Assembly (NCBI RefSeq): GCF_000315625.1
Contig: NW_005434621.1
Span: forward strand, 197,345 to 261,344
Reading direction: 5' to 3'
DNA: 64,000 bases
From: Guillardia theta CCMP2712
Lineage: Eukaryota > Protista > Cryptophyta
Positions 1,478 to 61,271 of this stretch are shown here, piece by piece. The first letter of the stretch is position 1. Every line of letters starts with the position of its first letter. The notes beneath the pieces were generated by a model. The model made no database searches, was not told the origin of the DNA, and saw only the letters and a program-made list of their open reading frames with translations. A program made the translations under genes and the position numbers.

Positions 1478-2677
1478 GCTTGTACTCCCCCTCCTCCTCC
1501 TTCTCTTCTTCCTCCGCCTCAAGATCCCGCCGGGCACGCCGCTGCCACGCGGCCTGGCCCGGGGCCCGGGGGGCCCAATGGTACTAAGTTGTTAAGTAGA
1601 CAAGACTGCCAACAGGAAGAAAAACTGCAGGGTAGGACTCTGGTACATTCTCTAGACGCGGGACGGGTTGATAATTGATCCCTCGATGAGGCCGGCCTAT
1701 GATAACTACCCAATGAGCTTCCTCGGGATTTGATGTCAGGGACTTCGGAGCGCCTCCCACAGCAGTGCGGAGCTAACGATGAGATCGTTATATTAGGAGA
1801 AGATGCTGATAGCTTTGAAATAAGTGCAACGGGATCTGAATCCGGANNNNNNNNNNNNNNNNNNNNNNNNNNNNNNNNNNNNNNNNNNNNNNNNNNNNNN
1901 NNNNNNNNNNNNNNNNNNNNNNNNNNNNNNNNNNNNNNNNNNNNNNNNNNNNNNNNNNNNNNNNNNNNNNNNNNNNNNNNNNNNNNNNNNNNNNNNNNNN
2001 NNNNNNNNNNNNNNNNNNNNNNNNNNNNNNNNNNNNNNNNNNNNNNNNNNNNNNNNNNNNNNNNNNNNNNNNNNNNNNNNNNNNNNNNNNNNNNNNNNNN
2101 NNNNNNNNNNNNNNNNNNNNNNNNNNNNNNNNNNNNNNNNNNNNNNNNNNNNNNNNNNNNNNNNNNNNNNNNNNNNNNNNNNNNNNNNNNNNNNNNNNNN
2201 NNNNNNNNNNNNNNNNNNNTCCTCCCTCCCCTCTGCTCCCTCCTCCTCTTCCTCCTCCTCCTTTCTCCTCCTCCTCCTCCTTCTCCTCCTCCTCCTACTT
2301 CTGGTCCCCCTCATACTGCTGCTGCTCCCCCTCCTCCTCCTCCTCCTCCTCCAGCTGCTGCTTCTCCTCCTCATCCTCCTCATCCTCCTCCTCCTGCTGC
2401 TGCTACTGCTGGTTATGCTCCCCCTCCTTCCTCCCTACCTACCTACCTACTTCCTCCTGATCCTCCTCCTCCTCCTGATCCTCCTCCTCCTCCTGCTCAC
2501 CTGTCCCACTTGACAGACAGTCGCTGCTTCCTTCTTGAAGAACTCAGAAAAAGTTCGCGCAGCTTTGGATGCCTCAGGCCATAGCACAACCGCAGACACG
2601 GTAGTCGAGGATCGGCCTTCGAGAATTTCTGCCGCCCAACAGCTCGCAAGCAGCAAGGAGGCTACTTGGATCATCAT
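199..2677 (-). CDS. Hypothetical multi-exon protein, possibly secreted; interrupted by an N gap and running off the left edge
   Basis: Signal-peptide-like start MMIQVASLLLASCWAAE at 2677. GT-AG-bounded exon-like blocks at about 1175-1280, 840-935, 570-660, 358-465 and 199-292, separated by microsatellite introns. No recognisable domain, reading frame not pinned, linkage across the gap unproven. Confidence 0.35.
493..543. repeat. (GAGCAC)n intronic microsatellite
   Basis: Read directly from the sequence. Confidence 0.95.
1046..1155. repeat. (CATCT)n microsatellite
   Basis: Read directly from the sequence. Confidence 0.95.
1351..1474. repeat. (CAT)n microsatellite
   Basis: Read directly; it produces the spurious poly-His, poly-Ser and poly-Met ORFs. 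Confidence 0.95.
1847..2219. other. Assembly gap (N run)
   Basis: Run of N. Confidence 1.
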
Positions 2678-3311
2678 CGCATAGCCAAAGAGCTTGCTCC
2701 CTCTCCTCCTCTCTCTCCTCCTTGCTGCTCCTCCTCCTCCTCTCCCCCCCCTTCCCCTCCCCCTCCTCCCCTCCCGCCCACCATGATGCTCCCCGACAGC
2801 ATCATCACCTACTGCGACCACCCCCGAAATCAAGACCCCTGCCTCTGTTTTCACTACCGGGTATTCCTATGTGATTTATTCTAAAATAAACCGGTAGATA
2901 AATTAGACCACCCACCCTCGAAAAGGCAAGCGGCCCCGTTCCGCCTGAGCTCACATCTGAATGGGGAAGGAGAGAGAGGAGGAGGAGGAGGAGGAGGAGG
3001 AGGAGGAGGAGAGGGAGAATTGAAGGAGAAGAAGAAATCATGCAAGTATGGATAGGTATGTTTGCATGAAATGGTCAAGGAAGTCAGACACGTAAGGACG
3101 CTGTTTGGTGAGAATGGTTCCAGCCACGTCGATGCGACCGAAGGTCGCAGTTTCATGATGAAGAGGACGATAGAAGAGAGAAAAGCGAACATGTAGGCTG
3201 GGAGAAGGATGTTAACAACTGCTGAAGGAAGGAGAGAGGCAGGAGCTGCAAGCATCAGCTTGCTGTGCTCCACTTGGACTGATCATCCTTCAGATGTTGG
3301 ACTCCAAAACA

Positions 3312-7577
<4,266 letters not shown>

Positions 7578-54457: not shown

Positions 54458-56270
54458 ATGCGTGCCTTCCTGCTACTGGCGGCGGTTCAAGCGGTAGAAC
54501 ATGAATCCAGCCCCTCTACCCCTCTCCTCTCTCCTCCCTCTACCCCTCTCCTCCTCCTCCCTCTACCCCTCTCCTCTCTCTTCCTCCTCCCTCTACCCCT
54601 CTCTTCCTCCCTCTACCCCTCTCCTCTCCTCCTCCCTCTACCCCTCTCCTCTCTCTTCCTCCTCCCTCTACCCCTCTCCTCTCTCTCTACCCTCCCCCTC
54701 TTTCCTCCTCCCTCTACCCCTCTCCTCTCTCTCTACCCCTCTCCTCTCTCTCCTCCCTCTACTCCGCTCCTCTCTCCTCCCTCTACCCCTCTCTCCTCCT
54801 CCTATTCTCAGCTCTCCCTTAACCCCCTCGACTTTGACCTTCTCACTACTCTTCACCATAAATGTTTCCCTCTCCATGTCTATTCTATAACGTAACATCC
54901 GCTGTTTTGCTCTGTTGAAAACAAACCACGCCCCCTCTTCTCGGGCTAGTCTCTCCTCTGTCATCTTGCTTGATTTCGACGTCATATACCTGCAATGCCT
55001 CCTCCTCCTCCGCTTTCTTCTTCCATTCTCGATTTGGACTTCCATTTTTTACACGGTTCCTTGCGCCCATTCTTCGCCTCCTACCTCTTCTCCTTCGGGG
55101 TTTGAAGTCTATTCAGTTTGCTGAGGCCGTGCATACGGCTCAAACCCTGCTCTCTCGTGGTTGTTTCTTCATTCTCCTCGTGCTTCTCGTGTTGTCTGTG
55201 ATGGTATCCAACAAACCTCTTGCAGCGTGTTTGTCCTGGCTTGAGTCCTCTTCTTTGACCAGCAAACTTGCAGGTTGCTGCATCAAGCTTCTCGCTGGTG
55301 CCTTCCTCCCTCCAGAATGATCGATTGGCGAGGTTTTGTTGACCAACGAGTGGCTCCTACTCTTCTGACCCTGCATGCGCCCAGGGCTTCGTTGCAGTCT
55401 GCCTTCGCCTCTAGTTCCCCTCTGCGCCTCCGTGGAGGAGGACCGAGACCGAAGGTTAGCGTCCTCAATGATCTCCCAGTATCCTTTCTGACATTCCCCG
55501 AGGTCTTCTTTGACATCACCATCGGCGGCAAGTCGGAAGGCAGGATTGTGATGGAACTCTTCGCGGATGTAGTGGTGAGTGGACTGCTGCAGTGCTCAGC
55601 ACTACTGATGAGTTGTGATCTCGAACAGCCGAAGACTGCTGAGAACTTCCGCTCCCTGTGTACCGGAGAGAAAGGAATGGGCAAGCTTGGCAAGGCTCTT
55701 CACTACAAGGGGAGCAAGTTCCACCGAGTGATCTCCGGTTTCATGTGCCAGGTGCTCAGACCATCCGAGGTCAACGGCGTCGTGGTTGTTGCTGACGACA
55801 TTTAGGGTGGAGACTTCACCAGAGGCGACGGACGTGGAGGAGAGTCGATCTATGGTGAGAAGTTCGCCGACGAGAACCTCAACCACAAGTTCAAGCACTC
55901 TGGTACTTTACTGCACCCGATAGCTCTTCTTTGAGTCAAGCCTTTTTTTTTAGGCCCGGGCATTCTCTCCATGGCCAACGCTGGGCCCGACACCAACGGA
56001 TCGCAGTTCTTCATCACCACCGTGCCAACCCCTCACCTGGACGGACGTCATTGCGTGTTCGGCAAGGTTCGAAGAGCTACGGCCGATTCGCTTCTGTGGG
56101 TGAACTCGGAGCAGGTTGTGGACGGCATGGACGTCGTTTCCAAGATCGAGTCGAACCCCACCAGCCGAGGAGATGCCCCGGTACTCGTTGTTGAAGCCTG
56201 TCGGGTGTGATCTGAAAGCTTCGCACAGGTCAAGGAGGTTGTGATTGCTGACTGCGGACAGATCGAGTAG
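54458..56270 (+). CDS. Cyclophilin (PPIase) with a hydrophobic presequence ending in LRLRGG; first exon uncertain
   Basis: [96 protein letters not shown]. Confidence 0.92.
54510..54795. repeat. Degenerate (CTCTACCCCTCTCCT)n pyrimidine minisatellite, probably intronic
   Basis: Read directly from the sequence. Confidence 0.85.
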
Positions 56271-56505
56271 AGGGCTGCTTGTTCTGGGAGCTAGGAGCAT
56301 GAGGGTGCAGTAAACCACTCGTGTCTTCTAGTGTTTTATGCGATTCTTTGATTATCGAAAGCGTCTGGGTGATTTCTCAATCATCCCTCGTCGTCTCGCG
56401 TACGTTCTGAGCGGTTAGAGCACAGATGAGCGCGCTATACAGGCAGTGAGTGGTGGGCCATCATGGCATACGAGTCGAAATTCTCCGATCCAGCAGGTTA
56501 AGTTC

Positions 56506-59500
56506 CTAGAACCCTGGTGCCTTTGTGCTTGCCCCGAGCAGCATATGTAGAAGACGCTCTACAGACTCCCTGAGACGTCCGTGAGGGGAGAAGAGGAAAG
56601 GAGTACAAAAAGACCTCAAGACCGCATCGTTGGCATTCACCGTCATCGTCAGCGTCCTCTCCGCCTAGGATGCAAGTCACAACCCCACAATCTCACCGCA
56701 TCTTCACCTGATTCGCCGTCATCTGCAAGCAGCATTCTGATGTCACGCCGCTGCCCTCGAATAGGCCGCAGCCATGGATGGAGTTCTCCGCCGAGTCCGC
56801 CACCAGCCCCATGTGCAGCCCATTGTTGAGCATCGCCTTGAGCGTTGACACGTTCATCCACTTCTCGGTGGTGCTGATGGTCTGACACTGACCGCAGGAG
56901 GAGCACGAGGCGAACTTGGAGTCGAAGTCACTCTTGCTCAGCTGCACTGCCGTCGTGAACTTGCAGGAGAAGACAGGAAGCTTCAGCGACAGGACCCGCT
57001 GCTCGGCTGCGGAAGAGAAGGAGATCGTCATGCCGACGGGGTTGACGAAAGGCCTTGAGCAAGCCATGGACGTGGTCAGCTGCAGCTGCTGCTTCGCTGC
57101 GATCTGGTTGGTGTGGCTCGAGACCGATCCCGACAACTCCTGCGAAAAATGGATCTGAATGGCGAAGTTGGTCATCTCCTGCGGCATCTTGTTCCCCACG
57201 AAGATCGCCAACTTCCCGTTGCTCTTGGAGTACTGCGACTTGATTCCAATCTGTACAAACGAGTCTTCATACAAGATCCCCTCCTTGTTCACAGCCAGCC
57301 GCACAAGCCAATTGAACATCTGCTCGTAGGTGGCACCTGGCGACTGACCGCTGACCGACAAGTCCACGTGAGTCCCGGGAGCGTCGAAGCCTCCCATGAG
57401 CGACATGCTGCCTGCTGCGAAGTTGGGCGGCTGCATGAAGGACGAGGCGAAAGGATCAGGTGCGCTGTTCATCGCCATGGCCGGCACACTAGCAGCTGCG
57501 TTAGGCGGCTGAGGAGGAGTTGCGCCAGACAGGTCGAGAGAAACCAAGTCGTCGATCAACGAGGCGTTGGCCTTGGGTGCTACTGATGCTGAAGATGATG
57601 GAACTACAGGGACTTGTGGCACAGGGGGCGGCATGTAGGGATTGTCAGCAGGGGGAGGAGAAAAAGGAGGGGGAGGAGGTTGCGAGTACTGCACAACGGG
57701 TGAGAACAAGGGAGGCAACCGAGAGGAGGAGAAGGCAACTCACGTTTCCATGATTGTGCAGTCCCTGCCCGCTCGGCCCTAAAGAGAAGATGTCATCCTC
57801 CTTTGGATGCATGCTTGAACTCGCGATAGTTTGCGGCATCCTGTCAAGGTGTCACGGGAAAATCGTACGGCCTACAGGGCGGCGGGGAGCGCACCCCAGG
57901 GGCGAGTTGAAGGGATGAGTTGGAGGAGGAGGAGGTTTCGGAGACCCGAACAGCTCCTGCAGCTGGGGTCACTGCTGGGCTGTGGCAAAGAGGTAGGCGC
58001 GTTCACCTCCAGCACGTTCATATCCTCTCTCTTCGACGCCTTGGGGCGCACGTCAGGTCCGATCCCCTTAGAAGAGGAAAATGTTTCTCACCTTCACCTT
58101 CTCCTCCGCCGCTGTCTTGGTCGACTCCGCCAGAGCCTGTCGCAGCTCTTCGTCCTCGTCGTAACTCGCTGCTAAAAATAATGAGGATGAGGAGGACAAG
58201 GAGGAGTTTTGTCAACATTCCAAGAGGAGGAGGGGAGTGACTTACCTGATAGGGGGGACTGGAAGACAGGAGTCTCGGCGTTCGTCTGGAAAAATCTTCA
58301 GAGATCAGGAGGAGGAACAGAAAGTGATGATGGAGGAGGGGGTGGAGAAGACAGGACGGAGGATGTGAGGAGATGGTGCTGAGATTCTGACCGTGGGAGA
58401 TGTATGCTGCTGCGCTTGGTCTGGCCGCTTCTTCCCCCTGCGATGGAACTTCAACACAACCAGAAGACCACGTGCACCATGGCTGACATTAGCAGATCTT
58501 CATATTCATTCAACTTCTCCGTGATTTGATCATTCAATGTCAAGAATTGCATGAGCCGAGCCTGAATATATGTGAAAATTTCGTGAAAATCACCATTCTT
58601 GTCTTCACCTCATCTTGTATTTCTCCAACTTGGTTCTGTATCGCAACCACACACGCTTTACACATCATTACTACTTCCGCCAGAGCCTGATGGCATGTCA
58701 GAAGATCCTGGACAGCTCTCTACCGTATTCACCTCGTTGCCGTGTAAGCTTGACGCATCTTCTGCTGTCAGCATCGACGACAGCAGCGTAAGGTACTCCT
58801 TCCCCTGATCCAGATCGACCTTCTGCTCCGACCCAAATGCAGGCGGGAGCAGGTGAGACGTTTCAGCTTCTAAGGGAAGAGATGGAGGGGAGCATCAATT
58901 CATTCACCTTGAGATTGATATCTGCGTTGTATCCAGCCCCAGGAGCGTAGTTGCCGTTGGAAAAGTCCTCGCGCATCTGTCACGCAGAAAAAGCATCAGG
59001 TAAGTTTTTTGCCTCATCCCTGCCTCTCACATCTCCATATCCCGCGTCCATATTCGATGGCCTCGTTGCATTCGGATAAGAGCTCAATCCTGGACGCATC
59101 TGCAACATTTTCTCACCAGTTCAGTCGCTACCTTTCCTTCGCCTCCGTCCCTCCGTCCCTCTCTCCCTCCGTCCCTCTCCTCTCCCTCCCTCCCTCCCTC
59201 CCTCACAAATAGACTCACAGGTTGAAGGCCCTGTTGTCTATCCTGCATAGCCCTCTGCTGCAACTGTACTTTCTCCTCTGTCACACAGGCAGTCAGAACC
59301 CTCTCTCTATTCTCCTGGCAGCTTTCCAGATCTTGCCAGCTCTTTGGCAGAAGCAGCATATTCGTTCATTCTCCCATCCGTCCCGTACAGCCTGCCACCA
59401 GACCTCAATCTCAACACGTCTCCTTGCAACAAGAAGGGTACCGAGACCAACTTCGAATCAGCTCTGCAGCCTTCTGCTGCACATTGGGATAGTTTCCCTA

Positions 59501-60044
59501 CACGGTCATCAGCCTTAGTCTCTGCCCCCCTGCCCTCCTCTTTCACCTTCCCCGGCGTCGCAAGCTTGAGGACTCGGGACAGAACTTTCTTCATCACCAA
59601 CACTTGGAACTGAAATCCGTTGCTCTGCCATGCTGCTGAGTGCTCCAACTTCACACGGAGGCAAGATTGACCTGCATGCACTGATCTAGAAGGTCCAGAG
59701 ACACCACAGAAACCTGCGTCGCAGACTGTCAGGTATGCAAGGACCACCCAATCCCCTCATACTTGCGGGCTCTTGTCTTTGACTCTAGCCTTGATGTTCT
59801 TGACAGCTTCCATGATTCTGGACCCAAAAATCAGCCGGCATGCTTCCTCTAGCGTATTCGGAGAGGAATACAAGTTGGGGTGCTCCTGGAGAATCTGGTT
59901 GATTTCAACCATCGCTGCATAGAAGGCTCAGCATTCGTCCCCTCCCTCCTTCCTCGTCGTCATACCTGTCGGATCGCCTTCCCCGTCCCTCCCTGGGTTC
60001 GTTGCCCGGAATATAGCGCCCTTGAGTTTGACCACCTCTCCCAT
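56506..60044 (-). CDS. VHS-GAT-UIM-Pro-rich-alpha-adaptin appendage protein (GGA/Tom1-like adaptor)
   Basis: VHS: IFRATNP..EAVKNIKARVKDKSPQVSVVSLDLLDQCMQSNGFQF..VQQKAAELIRSW. GAT: QDEARLMQFLTLNDQITEKLNEYEDL. UIM: DEDEELRQALAES. Alpha ear: EGILYEDSFVQIGIKSQY..LSLKLPVFSCKF, plus platform CCLQMTANQAERTLTMTV. Confidence 0.8.
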
Positions 60045-61271
60045 GTCTAGTCTGCCAAGTCCGGTCACCTTGACCTCGTCGCTTCCTCAGTCTGTACTAA
60101 TCATCTGCTATCAGCTATCCTGTGTGCATGGGATCTCTACGTGCAAGGCGTCATGGATCTCTGCCCAATCCCAAGCACTCCTGCATCCCTCTTTGTTGAT
60201 AAATCCACTTGCGAAACACAGGAAGCTTGCATTCTTCTATCTGTGGCTTCGTTCACAATGTACGAAGCAGTTCAGAAGCTCTATGATTTCTTCAGAGCGA
60301 CTTCTGCCTAGTCAATCTCTACCAAGCCTCGTCCTCCTGTATCTCTGCGAATCCTCCACATACCCTTCAATCACACAGCGCTTCCTTCAAAATCTCCTCC
60401 GTTTCAACCTGTATCTTCTCGATCCTCCACCTCCTCAACCTGACCATCCATCTGTTCCTCATCCTGATATCTCTGCCTCTCCTTCCTCCCCTCTTCCTGT
60501 CCCTTCATCTCGCTTCTCGCCCATTTTTGTTTCTCCTGCCACCTTCGGCATTACCTAGTGACTGTACTACCCTACCCTCTAGAGCTCCTACCCTCTGACC
60601 CGTTCCACTACCCTCTGAAGATTGTGTCCTGTACCCCCGAATCATCTGCATCACCCCTGCTTTTCCCTTTTTATGACCCCTCGTGTCCGACCTTTTATGT
60701 ATACCCTACCCACCATCGGGGCGATTGCTGCTACATGCCACCCCCACCCCAAGCAACGATGAGTAATACTCTACCCCTATCCGAAGGGTCTACAACTTTT
60801 CCCTCTGCATTAGGTGGAGGGACCGGTCCTTGAGCCACTGTAACTACACCACCACCCCTTTGACCTAAGGGATTCAATAACCATAATTCAGGGGTAGGGG
60901 TGCTATGTACCACCCCTTCGTTGCACCTCCAAAGTACCCCGTGGCCTTCTGTGTATGTTGACTATAATACCATCTCACCCGCCTTTCTGACCTCTACCCC
61001 TCCAAGTACTGTAAACCACCCTCCCATTGTTAGCTATTTTGACAAGGTTCACCACCCCCAGGGACACAGTACCCCTGTATTACCAAACCCCCTACCCCCC
61101 TCTGCCCCATGTTCTGAGGCGGGTTGTATTTGACTACGTCCATCAAAGTAAAGACGAGAAGAATGGAGCGACGCGAGGAGGAGGAGGGCAGCAGCATAAC
61201 GAAAGCAGATGCTTCCTTCTCCTCTCCTCTCCTCTCCTTGTCCTCCTCTTTCTCTCCACTCCAGACTTCCT

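What the first reader, a model, noticed from the sequence alone, without database searches (positions are those of the whole stretch)
56506..60044. GGA-like monomeric adaptor with an alpha-adaptin ear: VHS-GAT-UIM-hinge-alpha ear
Seen: hand-splicing gives one run of minus-strand exons. They encode a VHS domain (about 60044-59330), a GAT-like helical bundle (about 58850-58480), a textbook UIM DEDEELRQALAES (about 58123-58163), a Pro-rich hinge with DDIF, LIDDLVSLDL and DPF motifs, and then both subdomains of an AP-2 alpha-type appendage (about 57300-56506). Known: Tom1-family proteins are VHS-GAT without an ear; opisthokont GGAs are VHS-GAT-hinge-GAMMA ear; alpha ears normally end the AP-2 large subunit and bind DPF/FxDxF motifs. 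Inference: an independently assembled, ubiquitin-reading monomeric clathrin adaptor that converges on the GGA design with the AP-2 ear, possibly autoinhibited by its own DPF. I do not know this architecture from the literature.
Basis: partly seen in the sequence, partly recalled or inferred. Interest (0 to 1): 0.85.

Follow-up and report, generated by a model that had tools for sequence, protein, structure and literature searches.

The report
Tom1-like adaptor with alpha-adaptin ear
A cryptophyte alga (Guillardia theta) makes one protein that joins a Tom1-type ubiquitin-reading head (VHS, GAT, UIM) through a motif-rich hinge to an AP-2 alpha-type ear; this GGA-like design is mis-annotated in GenBank, and I found it described only for malaria-parasite KIC4 (and, for the ear alone, Toxoplasma KAE).

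Summary
The window is Guillardia theta CCMP2712. Spliced transcript contigs from two studies cover 56333-60053 in one piece. They give 22 exons and one 769-aa ORF (ATG 60044, stop 56506).

- **Head:** a Tom1-like VHS, a GAT domain and a consensus UIM.
- **Hinge:** disordered, with acidic-LF, clathrin-box-like and DPF motifs that recur in the one ortholog with a comparable hinge.
- **Ear:** a two-subdomain alpha-type appendage. PDB sequence hits are AP-2 alpha only. The AlphaFold model scores TM 0.77-0.87 to alpha ears, 0.53-0.58 to beta2, and gamma/GGA ears cover only the sandwich.

GenBank calls it "AP-2 subunit alpha 2", from a faulty 741-aa model with no adaptin trunk. Relatives I could recognise come only from cryptophytes or unlabelled environmental contigs.

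- The sandwich side-site residues are conserved. The platform DPF/FxDxF pocket is degraded (W840F, F837D, R905Q, E907T, R916T). Self-inhibition through its own DPF is therefore unlikely.
- The design has precedent: Plasmodium KIC4 (VHS-GAT-appendage) and alveolate KAE (trunk-less alpha ear).
- The best ear tree favours an independent cryptophyte origin, but a test does not exclude common ancestry.

I rate it a new variant of a known kind. Function is inferred, not shown.

The parts
56333..60427 (-). Transcribed region (mRNA with 5' and 3' UTRs), 22 exons
   Evidence: Spliced contigs X1, X2 and X6 laid on the window. X2 and X6 each bridge the whole coding region.
56506..60044 (-). CDS of the 769-aa protein (ATG 60044-60042, stop 56508-56506)
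   Evidence: Exon reconstruction and translation. It matches GenBank model P0151 exactly except at four mis-modelled places.
59327..60044 (-). VHS domain, aa ~5-139, spread over 7 exons
   Evidence: Pfam PF00790 scores 4.3e-11 with full profile coverage on the ortholog P0153:1-150 and 3.3e-4 on the broken model P0151. The PDB profile search ranks TOM1 first at 6.9e-11, with GGA at 0.4-0.9.
58487..58822 (-). GAT domain (three-helix bundle), aa ~206-286, 3 exons
   Evidence: Pfam PF03127 scores 4.7e-8, 33.6 bits against a cutoff of 31. P0002 gives the same result. No hit to GGA_N-GAT appeared.
58113..58160 (-). UIM, DEDEELRQALAESTKT, aa 319-334, inside a long confident helix
   Evidence: Pfam UIM scores 0.0043. 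The motif is also present in P0002 as DDEEEQLRRALEES. AlphaFold predicts a helix with pLDDT ~95.
57939..57956 (-). Acidic LF motif (L-E-)ELFGSP, aa 353-358; similar motifs in P0002 (LEDLFGGP) and P0004 (LDDIFGPS)
   Evidence: Motif scan of Guillardia and its orthologs.
57786..57797 (-). Second acidic motif, DDIF, aa 388-391
57530..57562 (-). SLIDDLVSLDL, aa 448-458: an LLDDE-like motif plus a clathrin-box-like LVSLD; P0002 has SLLDDLATLDF
57449..57457 (-). DPF motif, aa 483-485; P0002 has two DDPF motifs
   Evidence: AlphaFold predicts it disordered and undocked.
56978..57328 (-). Ear, beta-sandwich subdomain, aa ~526-642, with the alpha-type side-site residues kept
   Evidence: Pfam PF02883 scores 1.3e-10. 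The AlphaFold model has pLDDT 89.5. The equivalents of R707, K727, F740, G742 and Q782 are conserved.
56509..56968 (-). Ear, platform subdomain, aa ~646-769, crossing the last two introns (56664-56706 and 56569-56613)
   Evidence: phmmer aligns it to AP-2 alpha ears through to the C-terminus. Foldseek TM to alpha appendages is 0.77-0.87. The pocket residues are replaced.
59278..59326 (-). Non-canonical GA..AG intron (49 nt) inside the VHS coding region
   Evidence: The joint is seen in X1, X2 and X6 with ends CT..TC on the plus strand and was re-read.

Best explanation
This is one expressed Guillardia theta gene. It encodes a monomeric, ear-bearing member of the Tom1 (VHS-GAT) lineage, laid out as Tom1-type VHS, GAT, UIM, a disordered hinge of about 180 aa, and a C-terminal AP-2 alpha-type appendage with sandwich and platform.

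The mechanism is inferred. VHS, GAT and UIM together would read ubiquitinated membrane cargo. The hinge motifs (EELFG/DDIF, SLIDDLVSLDL, DPF) would tether the protein to clathrin and, through DPF acting in trans, to the ears of the real AP-2 complex. Its own ear would recruit accessory proteins mainly through the conserved sandwich side site, which binds WxxF-type motifs in AP-2 alpha. The platform DPF/FxDxF pocket has been remodelled.

The protein would thus work like a GGA, as a single-chain cargo-clathrin-accessory hub, but built from Tom1 and alpha-ear parts. It most likely acts in ubiquitin-dependent endocytic or endosomal sorting. The ear was most likely copied from an AP-2 alpha gene within the cryptist lineage.
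For: - **One transcript, one ORF.** Spliced contigs from two studies span the gene. The 769-aa ORF has no stop. The MMETSP ortholog P0002 carries GAT, UIM and ear in one ORF.
- **Head.** VHS scores 4.3e-11 and GAT 4.7e-8. The VHS profile ranks TOM1 first (6.9e-11), then TOM1L1 (5.9e-6), Hrs, STAM and, much weaker, GGA (0.4-0.9).
- **Ear.** PDB phmmer hits at E<=10 are AP-2 alpha only, best 5e-13, across both subdomains. Of the best 150 among 447 library hits at E<=0.001, 72 carry an AP-2 alpha trunk, and all trunk-bearing ones scanned have Alpha_adaptin_C. The AlphaFold model has pLDDT 89.5. The top 8 Foldseek hits are the alpha appendage at TM 0.77-0.87, beta2 scores 0.53-0.58, and GAE covers ~110 residues only. 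The ESM Atlas neighbours are alpha-adaptin ear clusters: full AP-2 alpha, ear-only fragments and a trunk-less ciliate cluster.
- **Binding sites.** Side-site residues are conserved in all six orthologs covered at those columns, with Q782 in all seven. The platform pocket residues are lost.
- **Hinge.** The order of motifs is the same in Guillardia and P0002.
- **Origin.** The cryptophyte ears form a clade (100/95) next to AP-2 alpha sequences P0012 and P0016 (99/62 and 97/66).
Against: - No binding, localisation or genetic data exist; every functional step is inferred from domain and motif homology.
- UIM and the platform subdomain are below Pfam gathering thresholds.
- Guillardia has F at the W840 position, so some aromatic pocket may remain. 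The side-site assignment rests on residue identity and on my memory of mouse alpha-C numbering.
- The clathrin-box-like and acidic-LF motifs are short and could be chance. They are supported by only one or two orthologs.
- The taxa of the nearest AP-2 alpha sequences (P0012, P0016) are unknown, and SH-aLRT support is only 62-66, so the origin of the ear is not settled.
Confidence: 0.6

Rival explanations
1. The protein is an ortholog of the alveolate KAE/KIC4 family. Under this reading a VHS-GAT-alpha-ear adaptor arose once, before cryptists and alveolates split. The alveolate N-termini then diverged beyond sequence recognition.
For: - PfKIC4 was reported from AlphaFold models to have VHS-GAT-appendage-platform (PMC10718435).
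- KAE is a trunk-less alpha-ear protein found across alveolates (PMC10105704).
- The AU test does not reject a single clade of cryptophyte ears plus coiled-coil-ear proteins: p=0.61, and the constrained tree scores 7 lnL units better than the quick free search.
Against: - In the careful ML tree the two groups sit apart. The cryptophyte clade lies next to P0012 and P0016. The coiled-coil clade lies next to the AP-2 alpha of the ciliate Muranothrix, P0036.
- The coiled-coil-ear family shows no profile similarity to the cryptophyte VHS or GAT (hhalign probability below 1%).
- That family keeps all platform pocket residues, which the cryptophyte family has lost.
- I could not obtain true TgKAE or PfKIC4 sequences, so the coiled-coil family is only presumed to be KAE-like.
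Confidence: 0.15
2. This is the first reader's model: a GGA-like adaptor held closed because its own DPF motif occupies the platform pocket of its own alpha ear.
For: A DPF lies about 40 residues upstream of the ear in Guillardia, and P0002 has DDPF twice. F836 is conserved, and W840 is W in most orthologs.
Against: - The pocket residues equivalent to R905, E907, R916 and F837 are replaced in Guillardia (Q, T, T, D) and mostly in the orthologs. They are near-invariant in 38 trunk-bearing AP-2 alphas.
- The AlphaFold model of hinge plus ear leaves the DPF region at pLDDT 33-36, with no sign of docking. This is weak negative evidence.
Confidence: 0.1
3. As the GenBank name says, it is a second alpha subunit of the AP-2 complex.
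For: GenBank and UniProt name it 'Adaptor protein complex 2 subunit alpha 2', and the ear is alpha-type.
Against: There is no Adaptin_N trunk (Pfam), and the N-terminus is VHS-GAT. Without a trunk it cannot take the large-subunit place in the heterotetramer.
Confidence: 0.01
4. The single ORF is an artefact: two neighbouring genes (a Tom1-like gene and an ear-only gene) merged by read-through or by the assembler.
For: Contigs alone cannot prove that one molecule spans the gene (caveat stated). Raw reads in X17 pile up only at the 3' end.
Against: - Contigs from two independent studies give the same 21 splices with the frame kept across all of them.
- There is no stop, promoter-sized gap or UTR between the parts.
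- P0002, from another species, has the same fusion.
Confidence: 0.03

Closest known systems
[quoted passage not shown]
   Same: A trunk-less protein ending in an AP-2-type two-subdomain appendage. KIC4 was described from AlphaFold models as VHS-GAT-hinge-appendage. KAE's ear binds Eps15L through a WxxF motif, which uses the same side site that is conserved here (PMC10718435, PMC10105704).
   Different: - Those proteins are alveolate and sit at the K13 micropore or cytostome.
- Their VHS and GAT are not detectable by sequence, and KAE is described as coiled-coil plus ear.
- The TgKAE model was reported to keep the FxDxF/DPW sites, which the cryptophyte family has lost.
- KIC4's platform was called beta-like.
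- Orthology was not shown here. The best tree separates the cryptophyte ears from the presumed KAE-like clade, and the AU test is inconclusive.
TOM1 / Tom1-esc / plant TOL family (VHS-GAT ubiquitin adaptors, ESCRT-0-like)
   Same: An N-terminal VHS followed by GAT. The VHS profile matches TOM1 best. A disordered C-terminal half carries clathrin-type motifs.
   Different: Known Tom1-family proteins have no appendage domain. This one adds a UIM and a complete alpha-type ear.
Opisthokont GGA1-3 / Gga1p-Gga2p
   Same: The same overall logic and order: VHS, GAT, a hinge with clathrin-box-like motifs, and a C-terminal ear. The nearest ESM Atlas feature clusters are GGAs at score 0.85, which is a lead only.
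   Different: The ear is alpha-type with a platform, not the single-subdomain gamma ear (GAE). The VHS is closer to TOM1 than to GGA. No N-GAT Arf hook was detected. A UIM is present.
AP-2 alpha-adaptin appendage (for example mouse alpha-C, PDB 1B9K, 1QTP, 1W80, 2VJ0)
   Same: The same two-subdomain fold (TM 0.77-0.87) and the same side-site residues; this is its only sequence match in the PDB.
   Different: It is not attached to an adaptin trunk. Platform pocket residues F837, R905, E907 and R916 are replaced, and W840 is F in Guillardia.

Membership tests
GGA | N-terminal VHS domain | tested here: met
   PF00790 scores 4.3e-11 on the ortholog. The VHS nevertheless ranks with TOM1 (6.9e-11), not GGA (0.4-0.9), in the PDB profile search.
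GGA | GAT domain with the N-terminal Arf-binding hook (GGA_N-GAT) | tested here: inconclusive
   The GAT three-helix bundle is present (PF03127, 4.7e-8). PF18308 does not hit at E<=1. A ~65-aa low-complexity linker precedes GAT. Arf binding cannot be tested here.
GGA | C-terminal gamma-adaptin-type ear (single beta-sandwich GAE) | tested here: not met
   The ear has sandwich plus platform. The best matches are the AP-2 alpha appendage, and GAE structures align over only ~110 residues.
TOM1 / Tom1-esc | VHS-GAT tandem at the N-terminus, with VHS closest to TOM1 | tested here: met
TOM1 / Tom1-esc | A C-terminal half made of linear motifs, with no folded appendage | tested here: not met
   A folded alpha-type ear of ~250 aa is present.
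AP-2 alpha large subunit | Adaptin_N trunk (alpha-solenoid of ~600 aa) | tested here: not met
   PF01602 does not hit. phmmer with five AP-2 alpha trunks does not hit the cryptophyte proteins.
AP-2 alpha large subunit | Alpha appendage with both sandwich and platform | tested here: met
   Pfam PF02296 is only sub-threshold (0.0017-0.006).
AP-2 alpha large subunit | Platform DPF/DPW/FxDxF pocket (F836, F837, W840, R905, E907, R916; numbering from memory of mouse alpha-C) | tested here: not met
   Guillardia has F, D, F, Q, T, T at these positions. The orthologs mostly lack R905, E907 and R916. Among 38 AP-2 alphas, W840 is 38/38, E907 38/38 and R905 37/38.
AP-2 alpha large subunit | Sandwich side site (R707, K727, F740, G742, Q782) | tested here: met
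   Identical residues occur in all cryptophyte orthologs covered.
KAE / KIC4 (alveolate) | A trunk-less protein with a C-terminal alpha-type ear | tested here: met
   The architecture matches as described in PMC10105704 and PMC10718435.
KAE / KIC4 (alveolate) | Orthology: ears form one clade with KAE, and the N-termini are related | tested here: inconclusive
   True KAE and KIC4 sequences could not be fetched. Using a presumed KAE-like coiled-coil-ear family as a stand-in, the ML tree separates the groups, the AU test does not reject their union (p=0.61), and hhalign finds no N-terminal similarity.

The most novel reading that the evidence does not exclude
The cryptophyte protein may be the sequence-recognisable relative of the alveolate KAE/KIC4 adaptor. 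A Tom1-alpha-ear fusion would then be an old endocytic adaptor shared by cryptists and alveolates. The puzzling N-termini of KAE and KIC4, which are part of the artemisinin-relevant K13 endocytic machinery, would be degenerate Tom1 VHS-GAT modules that read ubiquitin.
Probability: 0.15. Interest if true: 0.75.

Novelty: new variant of a known kind. Interest (0 to 1): 0.55.

Why it matters
GGAs are usually treated as an opisthokont invention, and Tom1-type proteins as earless. Here a free-living alga has built the same single-chain design (cargo reader, clathrin hinge, ear) from different parts: a Tom1 head and an AP-2 alpha ear. All domains are detectable by sequence.

This gives a clean second example beside Plasmodium KIC4. 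The authors who described KIC4 said its layout had not been seen in any other protein in InterPro. The finding also shows that appendage domains are reusable modules that have moved onto new scaffolds more than once.

The split fate of the ear's two binding sites, with the side site kept and the platform pocket lost, is a testable statement about which interaction the ear was recruited for. The practical gain is a corrected gene model and name for XP_005829411.1.

Tried and rejected
- **Two genes, or a gamma-type ear.** Both were rejected.
- **AP-2 alpha paralog, as GenBank names it.** Rejected because there is no trunk.
- **Word-indexed homolog searches.** Searches with P0151, with P0002 residues 1-215 and with P0135 gave almost nothing beyond cryptophyte fragments. 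Low-complexity words saturated the candidate list or the domains were too divergent. These blanks say little.
- **Naming the taxa of the coiled-coil-ear family.**
  - Cluster look-ups gave no organism.
  - The Atlas gave no usable hit.
  - The encoding contig is an unnamed SRA transcript, and no dinoflagellate spliced leader was found in it.
- **Naming the taxon of the nearest AP-2 alpha (P0012).** It sits on an unnamed IMG contig.
- **Docking of the protein's own DPF.** The AlphaFold model of hinge plus ear gave no sign of it. Coordinates are not returned, so contacts could not be inspected.
- **Structure of the whole protein.** An intact full-length sequence could not be folded. The spliced 769-aa protein has no reference id, P0151 is mis-modelled and P0002 lacks the first 71 residues. 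The VHS and GAT were therefore not modelled.
- **Literature.** Six full-text searches found no description of this cryptophyte protein.
Full report
**Source and gene**

The window comes from Guillardia theta CCMP2712. The ear-encoding ORF retrieves a cluster whose named member is XP_005829411.1 / EKX42431.1, "Adaptor protein complex 2 subunit alpha 2" (741 aa, P0151). The gene lies on the minus strand. It converges on a cyclophilin gene that sits on the plus strand at about 55275-56210.

**One transcript, one ORF**

Read laying placed three spliced contigs on 56000-61000.
- X2 (2857 nt, study P2) and X6 (2478 nt, study P3) each run from 56333/56394 to 60042/60053.
- X1 covers 58487-60427.
- All three have the same short introns removed, so they derive from RNA.

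The joints that were not listed I rebuilt from record coordinates and splice signals. My first version had two hinge exons in a shifted frame, because the aligner had assigned ambiguous G residues to the wrong side of the joints. Using canonical boundaries fixed this, and the result agrees with GenBank over that stretch.

The final model has 22 exons and a 2310-nt CDS encoding 769 aa. The ATG is at 60044 and the stop at 56506-56508. Introns are 43-119 nt. All are GT..AG except 59278-59326, which is GA..AG.

The GenBank model differs in four places:
- it retains intron 59818-59871, adding 18 aa inside the VHS;
- it skips three exons (59219-59496, aa 100-159), which removes the C-terminal half of the VHS;
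- it uses the other acceptor of a NAGNAG pair at 58168/58171;
- it retains the last intron, adding 15 aa inside the platform.

**N-terminal half**

- VHS: on the intact N-terminus of a cryptophyte ortholog (P0153:1-150), Pfam VHS scores 4.3e-11 over the whole profile. On the damaged P0151 it scores only 3.3e-4.
- GAT: it passes the Pfam threshold in both Guillardia and P0002.
- VHS type: a profile of cryptophyte VHS sequences searched against the PDB ranks TOM1 first.

| PDB match | E-value |
|---|---|
| TOM1 | 6.9e-11 |
| TOM1L1 | 5.9e-6 |
| Human TOM1 | 7.7e-5 |
| Hrs | 0.006 |
| STAM2 | 0.02 |
| GGA1 / GGA3 | 0.4-0.9 |

- GAT type: the GAT profile matches TOM1 and GGA1 about equally and weakly. 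No GGA_N-GAT hit appeared. The head is therefore Tom1-like rather than GGA-like.
- UIM: DEDEELRQALAES fits the consensus exactly. It recurs in P0002 as DDEEEQLRRALEES. It lies in a long helix that AlphaFold predicts with pLDDT ~95.

**Hinge**

Residues ~340-520 are predicted to be disordered. Guillardia and P0002 share the same order of short motifs:
- UIM;
- an acidic LF motif (LEELFGSP / LEDLFGGP; P0004 has LDDIFGPS);
- SL(I/L)DDL(V/A)(S/T)LD(L/F), which combines an LLDDE-like motif with a clathrin-box-like one;
- one or two DPF motifs just before the ear.

From general knowledge of endocytic motifs, these are the kinds of sequence that bind the clathrin terminal domain and the AP-2 ears. 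That step is inference.

**Ear**

- PDB by sequence: phmmer of the main ear exon finds only AP-2 alpha appendages (best 5.2e-13), aligned across both subdomains. No beta, gamma or GGA ear appears even at E<=10.
- Exhaustive HMMER search: 447 proteins at E<=0.001. After six cryptophyte-type orthologs, the listed hits are alpha-type ears, either on AP-2 alpha trunks or as trunk-less proteins and fragments.
- With the complete spliced ear, the alignments run to the very C-terminus of AP-2 alpha.
- Pfam calls the sandwich subdomain (PF02883). For the platform it gives only sub-threshold hits, to Alpha_adaptin_C, to the beta2 platform and to the AP-4 epsilon platform.
- An AlphaFold model built on a 51-sequence alignment is confident (pLDDT 89.5, pTM 0.85). 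Confidence is low only in the retained-intron insert.
- Foldseek results are in the table below.

| PDB target | TM | Note |
|---|---|---|
| AP-2 alpha appendage (top 8 hits) | 0.77-0.87 | E ~1e-19, both subdomains |
| beta2 appendage | 0.53-0.58 | |
| gamma-adaptin / GGA GAE | – | covers only ~110 residues, the sandwich |

- The ESM Atlas shape search also returns alpha-adaptin ear clusters: full AP-2 alpha, ear-only fragments, and a trunk-less 608-aa cluster commonest in ciliates.

The ear is alpha-type.

**Binding sites**

I aligned 81 ears with a vertebrate AP-2 alpha and read the columns equivalent to the known motif-binding residues. The numbering is that of mouse alpha-C, recalled from memory and anchored on sequence motifs.
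- Sandwich side site (R707, K727, F740, G742, Q782): identical in every cryptophyte ortholog covered.
- Platform pocket: degraded, as the table shows.

| Position | 38 trunk-bearing AP-2 alphas | Guillardia | Other cryptophyte orthologs |
|---|---|---|---|
| F837 | F in 27/38 | D | E, D, S, D, D, R |
| W840 | W in 38/38 | F | W in all six |
| R905 | R in 37/38 | Q | R, K, C, K, T, Q |
| E907 | E in 38/38 | T | lost in all but one |
| R916 | R in 31/38 | T | S, T, S, K, T, S |

This argues that the ear was kept for its side-site interactions, which bind WxxF-type motifs in AP-2 alpha and, per PMC10105704, in TgKAE. The AlphaFold model of hinge plus ear gives the DPF region pLDDT 33-36, with no local rise. 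That is weak evidence in the same direction. The DPF more plausibly contacts the ears of the real AP-2 complex in trans.

**Distribution**

Recognisable orthologs:
- P0002, an MMETSP transcript of 670 aa with GAT, UIM and ear. It lacks the first 71 aa.
- P0006, from Baffinella.
- P0153-P0155, N-terminal fragments. P0153 stands for 50 sequences.
- P0003-P0005 and P0010, ear fragments from marine metagenomes.

Among the best 150 ear hits, only P0002 also matches the VHS-GAT region.

A separate family (P0102, P0145, P0074, P0087, P0110, P0124, P0135) joins a short conserved N-terminus and a coiled coil to an alpha ear. It keeps all pocket residues and has no profile similarity to the cryptophyte VHS or GAT.

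**What is already known**

Six full-text searches found nothing on the cryptophyte protein. They did surface two directly relevant papers.
- Koreny et al. 2023 (PMC10105704) describe KAE. It is a Toxoplasma K13-micropore protein with a conserved alpha ear and no trunk. It is present across alveolates, and its ear binds Eps15L through WxxF.
- Schmidt et al. 2023 (PMC10718435) report that its Plasmodium counterpart KIC4 has, by AlphaFold, VHS, GAT, an appendage sandwich and a platform. [quoted passage not shown]

The architecture therefore has a precedent. The third refutation criterion ("already described as a widespread family") is partly met for alveolates but not for cryptophytes.

**Same family or convergence?**

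I could not fetch KAE or KIC4 sequences. The coiled-coil-ear family serves only as a presumed stand-in, because its architecture matches the published description and it groups with a ciliate AP-2 alpha.

In the careful ML tree:
- the cryptophyte ears form a clade (UFBoot 100 / SH-aLRT 95 when fragment P0073 is included);
- their nearest neighbours are two AP-2 alpha sequences of unknown taxon, P0012 (99/62) and P0016 (97/66), followed by Ancoracysta;
- the coiled-coil clade (100/100) sits next to the AP-2 alpha of the ciliate Muranothrix (91/68).

This favours two separate captures of an alpha ear. However, an AU test does not reject joining the two groups (p=0.61). Both groups have long stems. 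I therefore put independent assembly at roughly 0.6-0.7 and common ancestry at about 0.15.

**Verdict**

The protein is best described as a Tom1-family adaptor that has gained a UIM and an AP-2 alpha-type ear. It works like a GGA but is not a member of that family, and it is not an AP-2 subunit.

It is a new variant of a known kind. It is moderately interesting for the evolution of membrane traffic, and more so if a link to KAE/KIC4 is shown. All functional statements are inferences from homology.

Noticed in passing
window 59278-59326 (minus strand): A 49-nt intron with GA..AG ends, removed in all three transcript contigs (X1, X2, X6). The other 20 introns of the gene are GT..AG.
   Followed up: partly
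window 58168-58171 (minus strand): A tandem NAGNAG acceptor (tag|cag). X2 uses the upstream site, giving SPLSAASYDE. X6 and the GenBank model use the downstream one, giving SPLSASYDE. The difference is one alanine just before the UIM.
   Followed up: partly
window 56506-60044; GenBank XP_005829411.1 (P0151): The deposited gene model retains two introns (59818-59871 and 56569-56613) and skips three exons (59219-59496), which breaks the VHS domain. Its name, 'AP-2 subunit alpha 2', is misleading because there is no adaptin trunk.
   Followed up: yes
P0102, P0145, P0074, P0087, P0110, P0124, P0135 (L001 encodes P0145): A family of 546-702-aa proteins from protist transcriptomes and metagenomes. 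Each has a short conserved N-terminus, a coiled coil (AKEMWMKE motif) and a complete alpha ear with all motif-binding residues kept. Their ears group with a ciliate AP-2 alpha. They are probably KAE-like, but the taxa could not be identified.
   Followed up: partly
P0041 (503 aa, EukProt transcript): One ORF carries a beta2-adaptin platform subdomain (PF09066, 3.9e-24) followed by a full alpha ear (PF02883 plus PF02296). It is either a double-ear protein or a chimeric transcript assembly.
   Followed up: no
window 56334-56667: The raw RNA reads of run X17 pile up only at the 3' end of the gene (depth 12 falling to 4), with the first mate on the minus strand. This looks like a 3'-biased library, so it says little about the rest of the transcript.
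   Followed up: no
If real, ear domains have been moved onto more than one scaffold in Guillardia.
   Followed up: no
L002 (IMG contig 3300047126, 23.8 kb): The AP-2 alpha whose ear is the nearest neighbour of the cryptophyte family lies on a gene-dense contig, where it is called as two overlapping ORFs (trunk 1526-3028, ear 3001-4269). The organism is unknown; identifying it would settle where the ear came from.
   Followed up: partly
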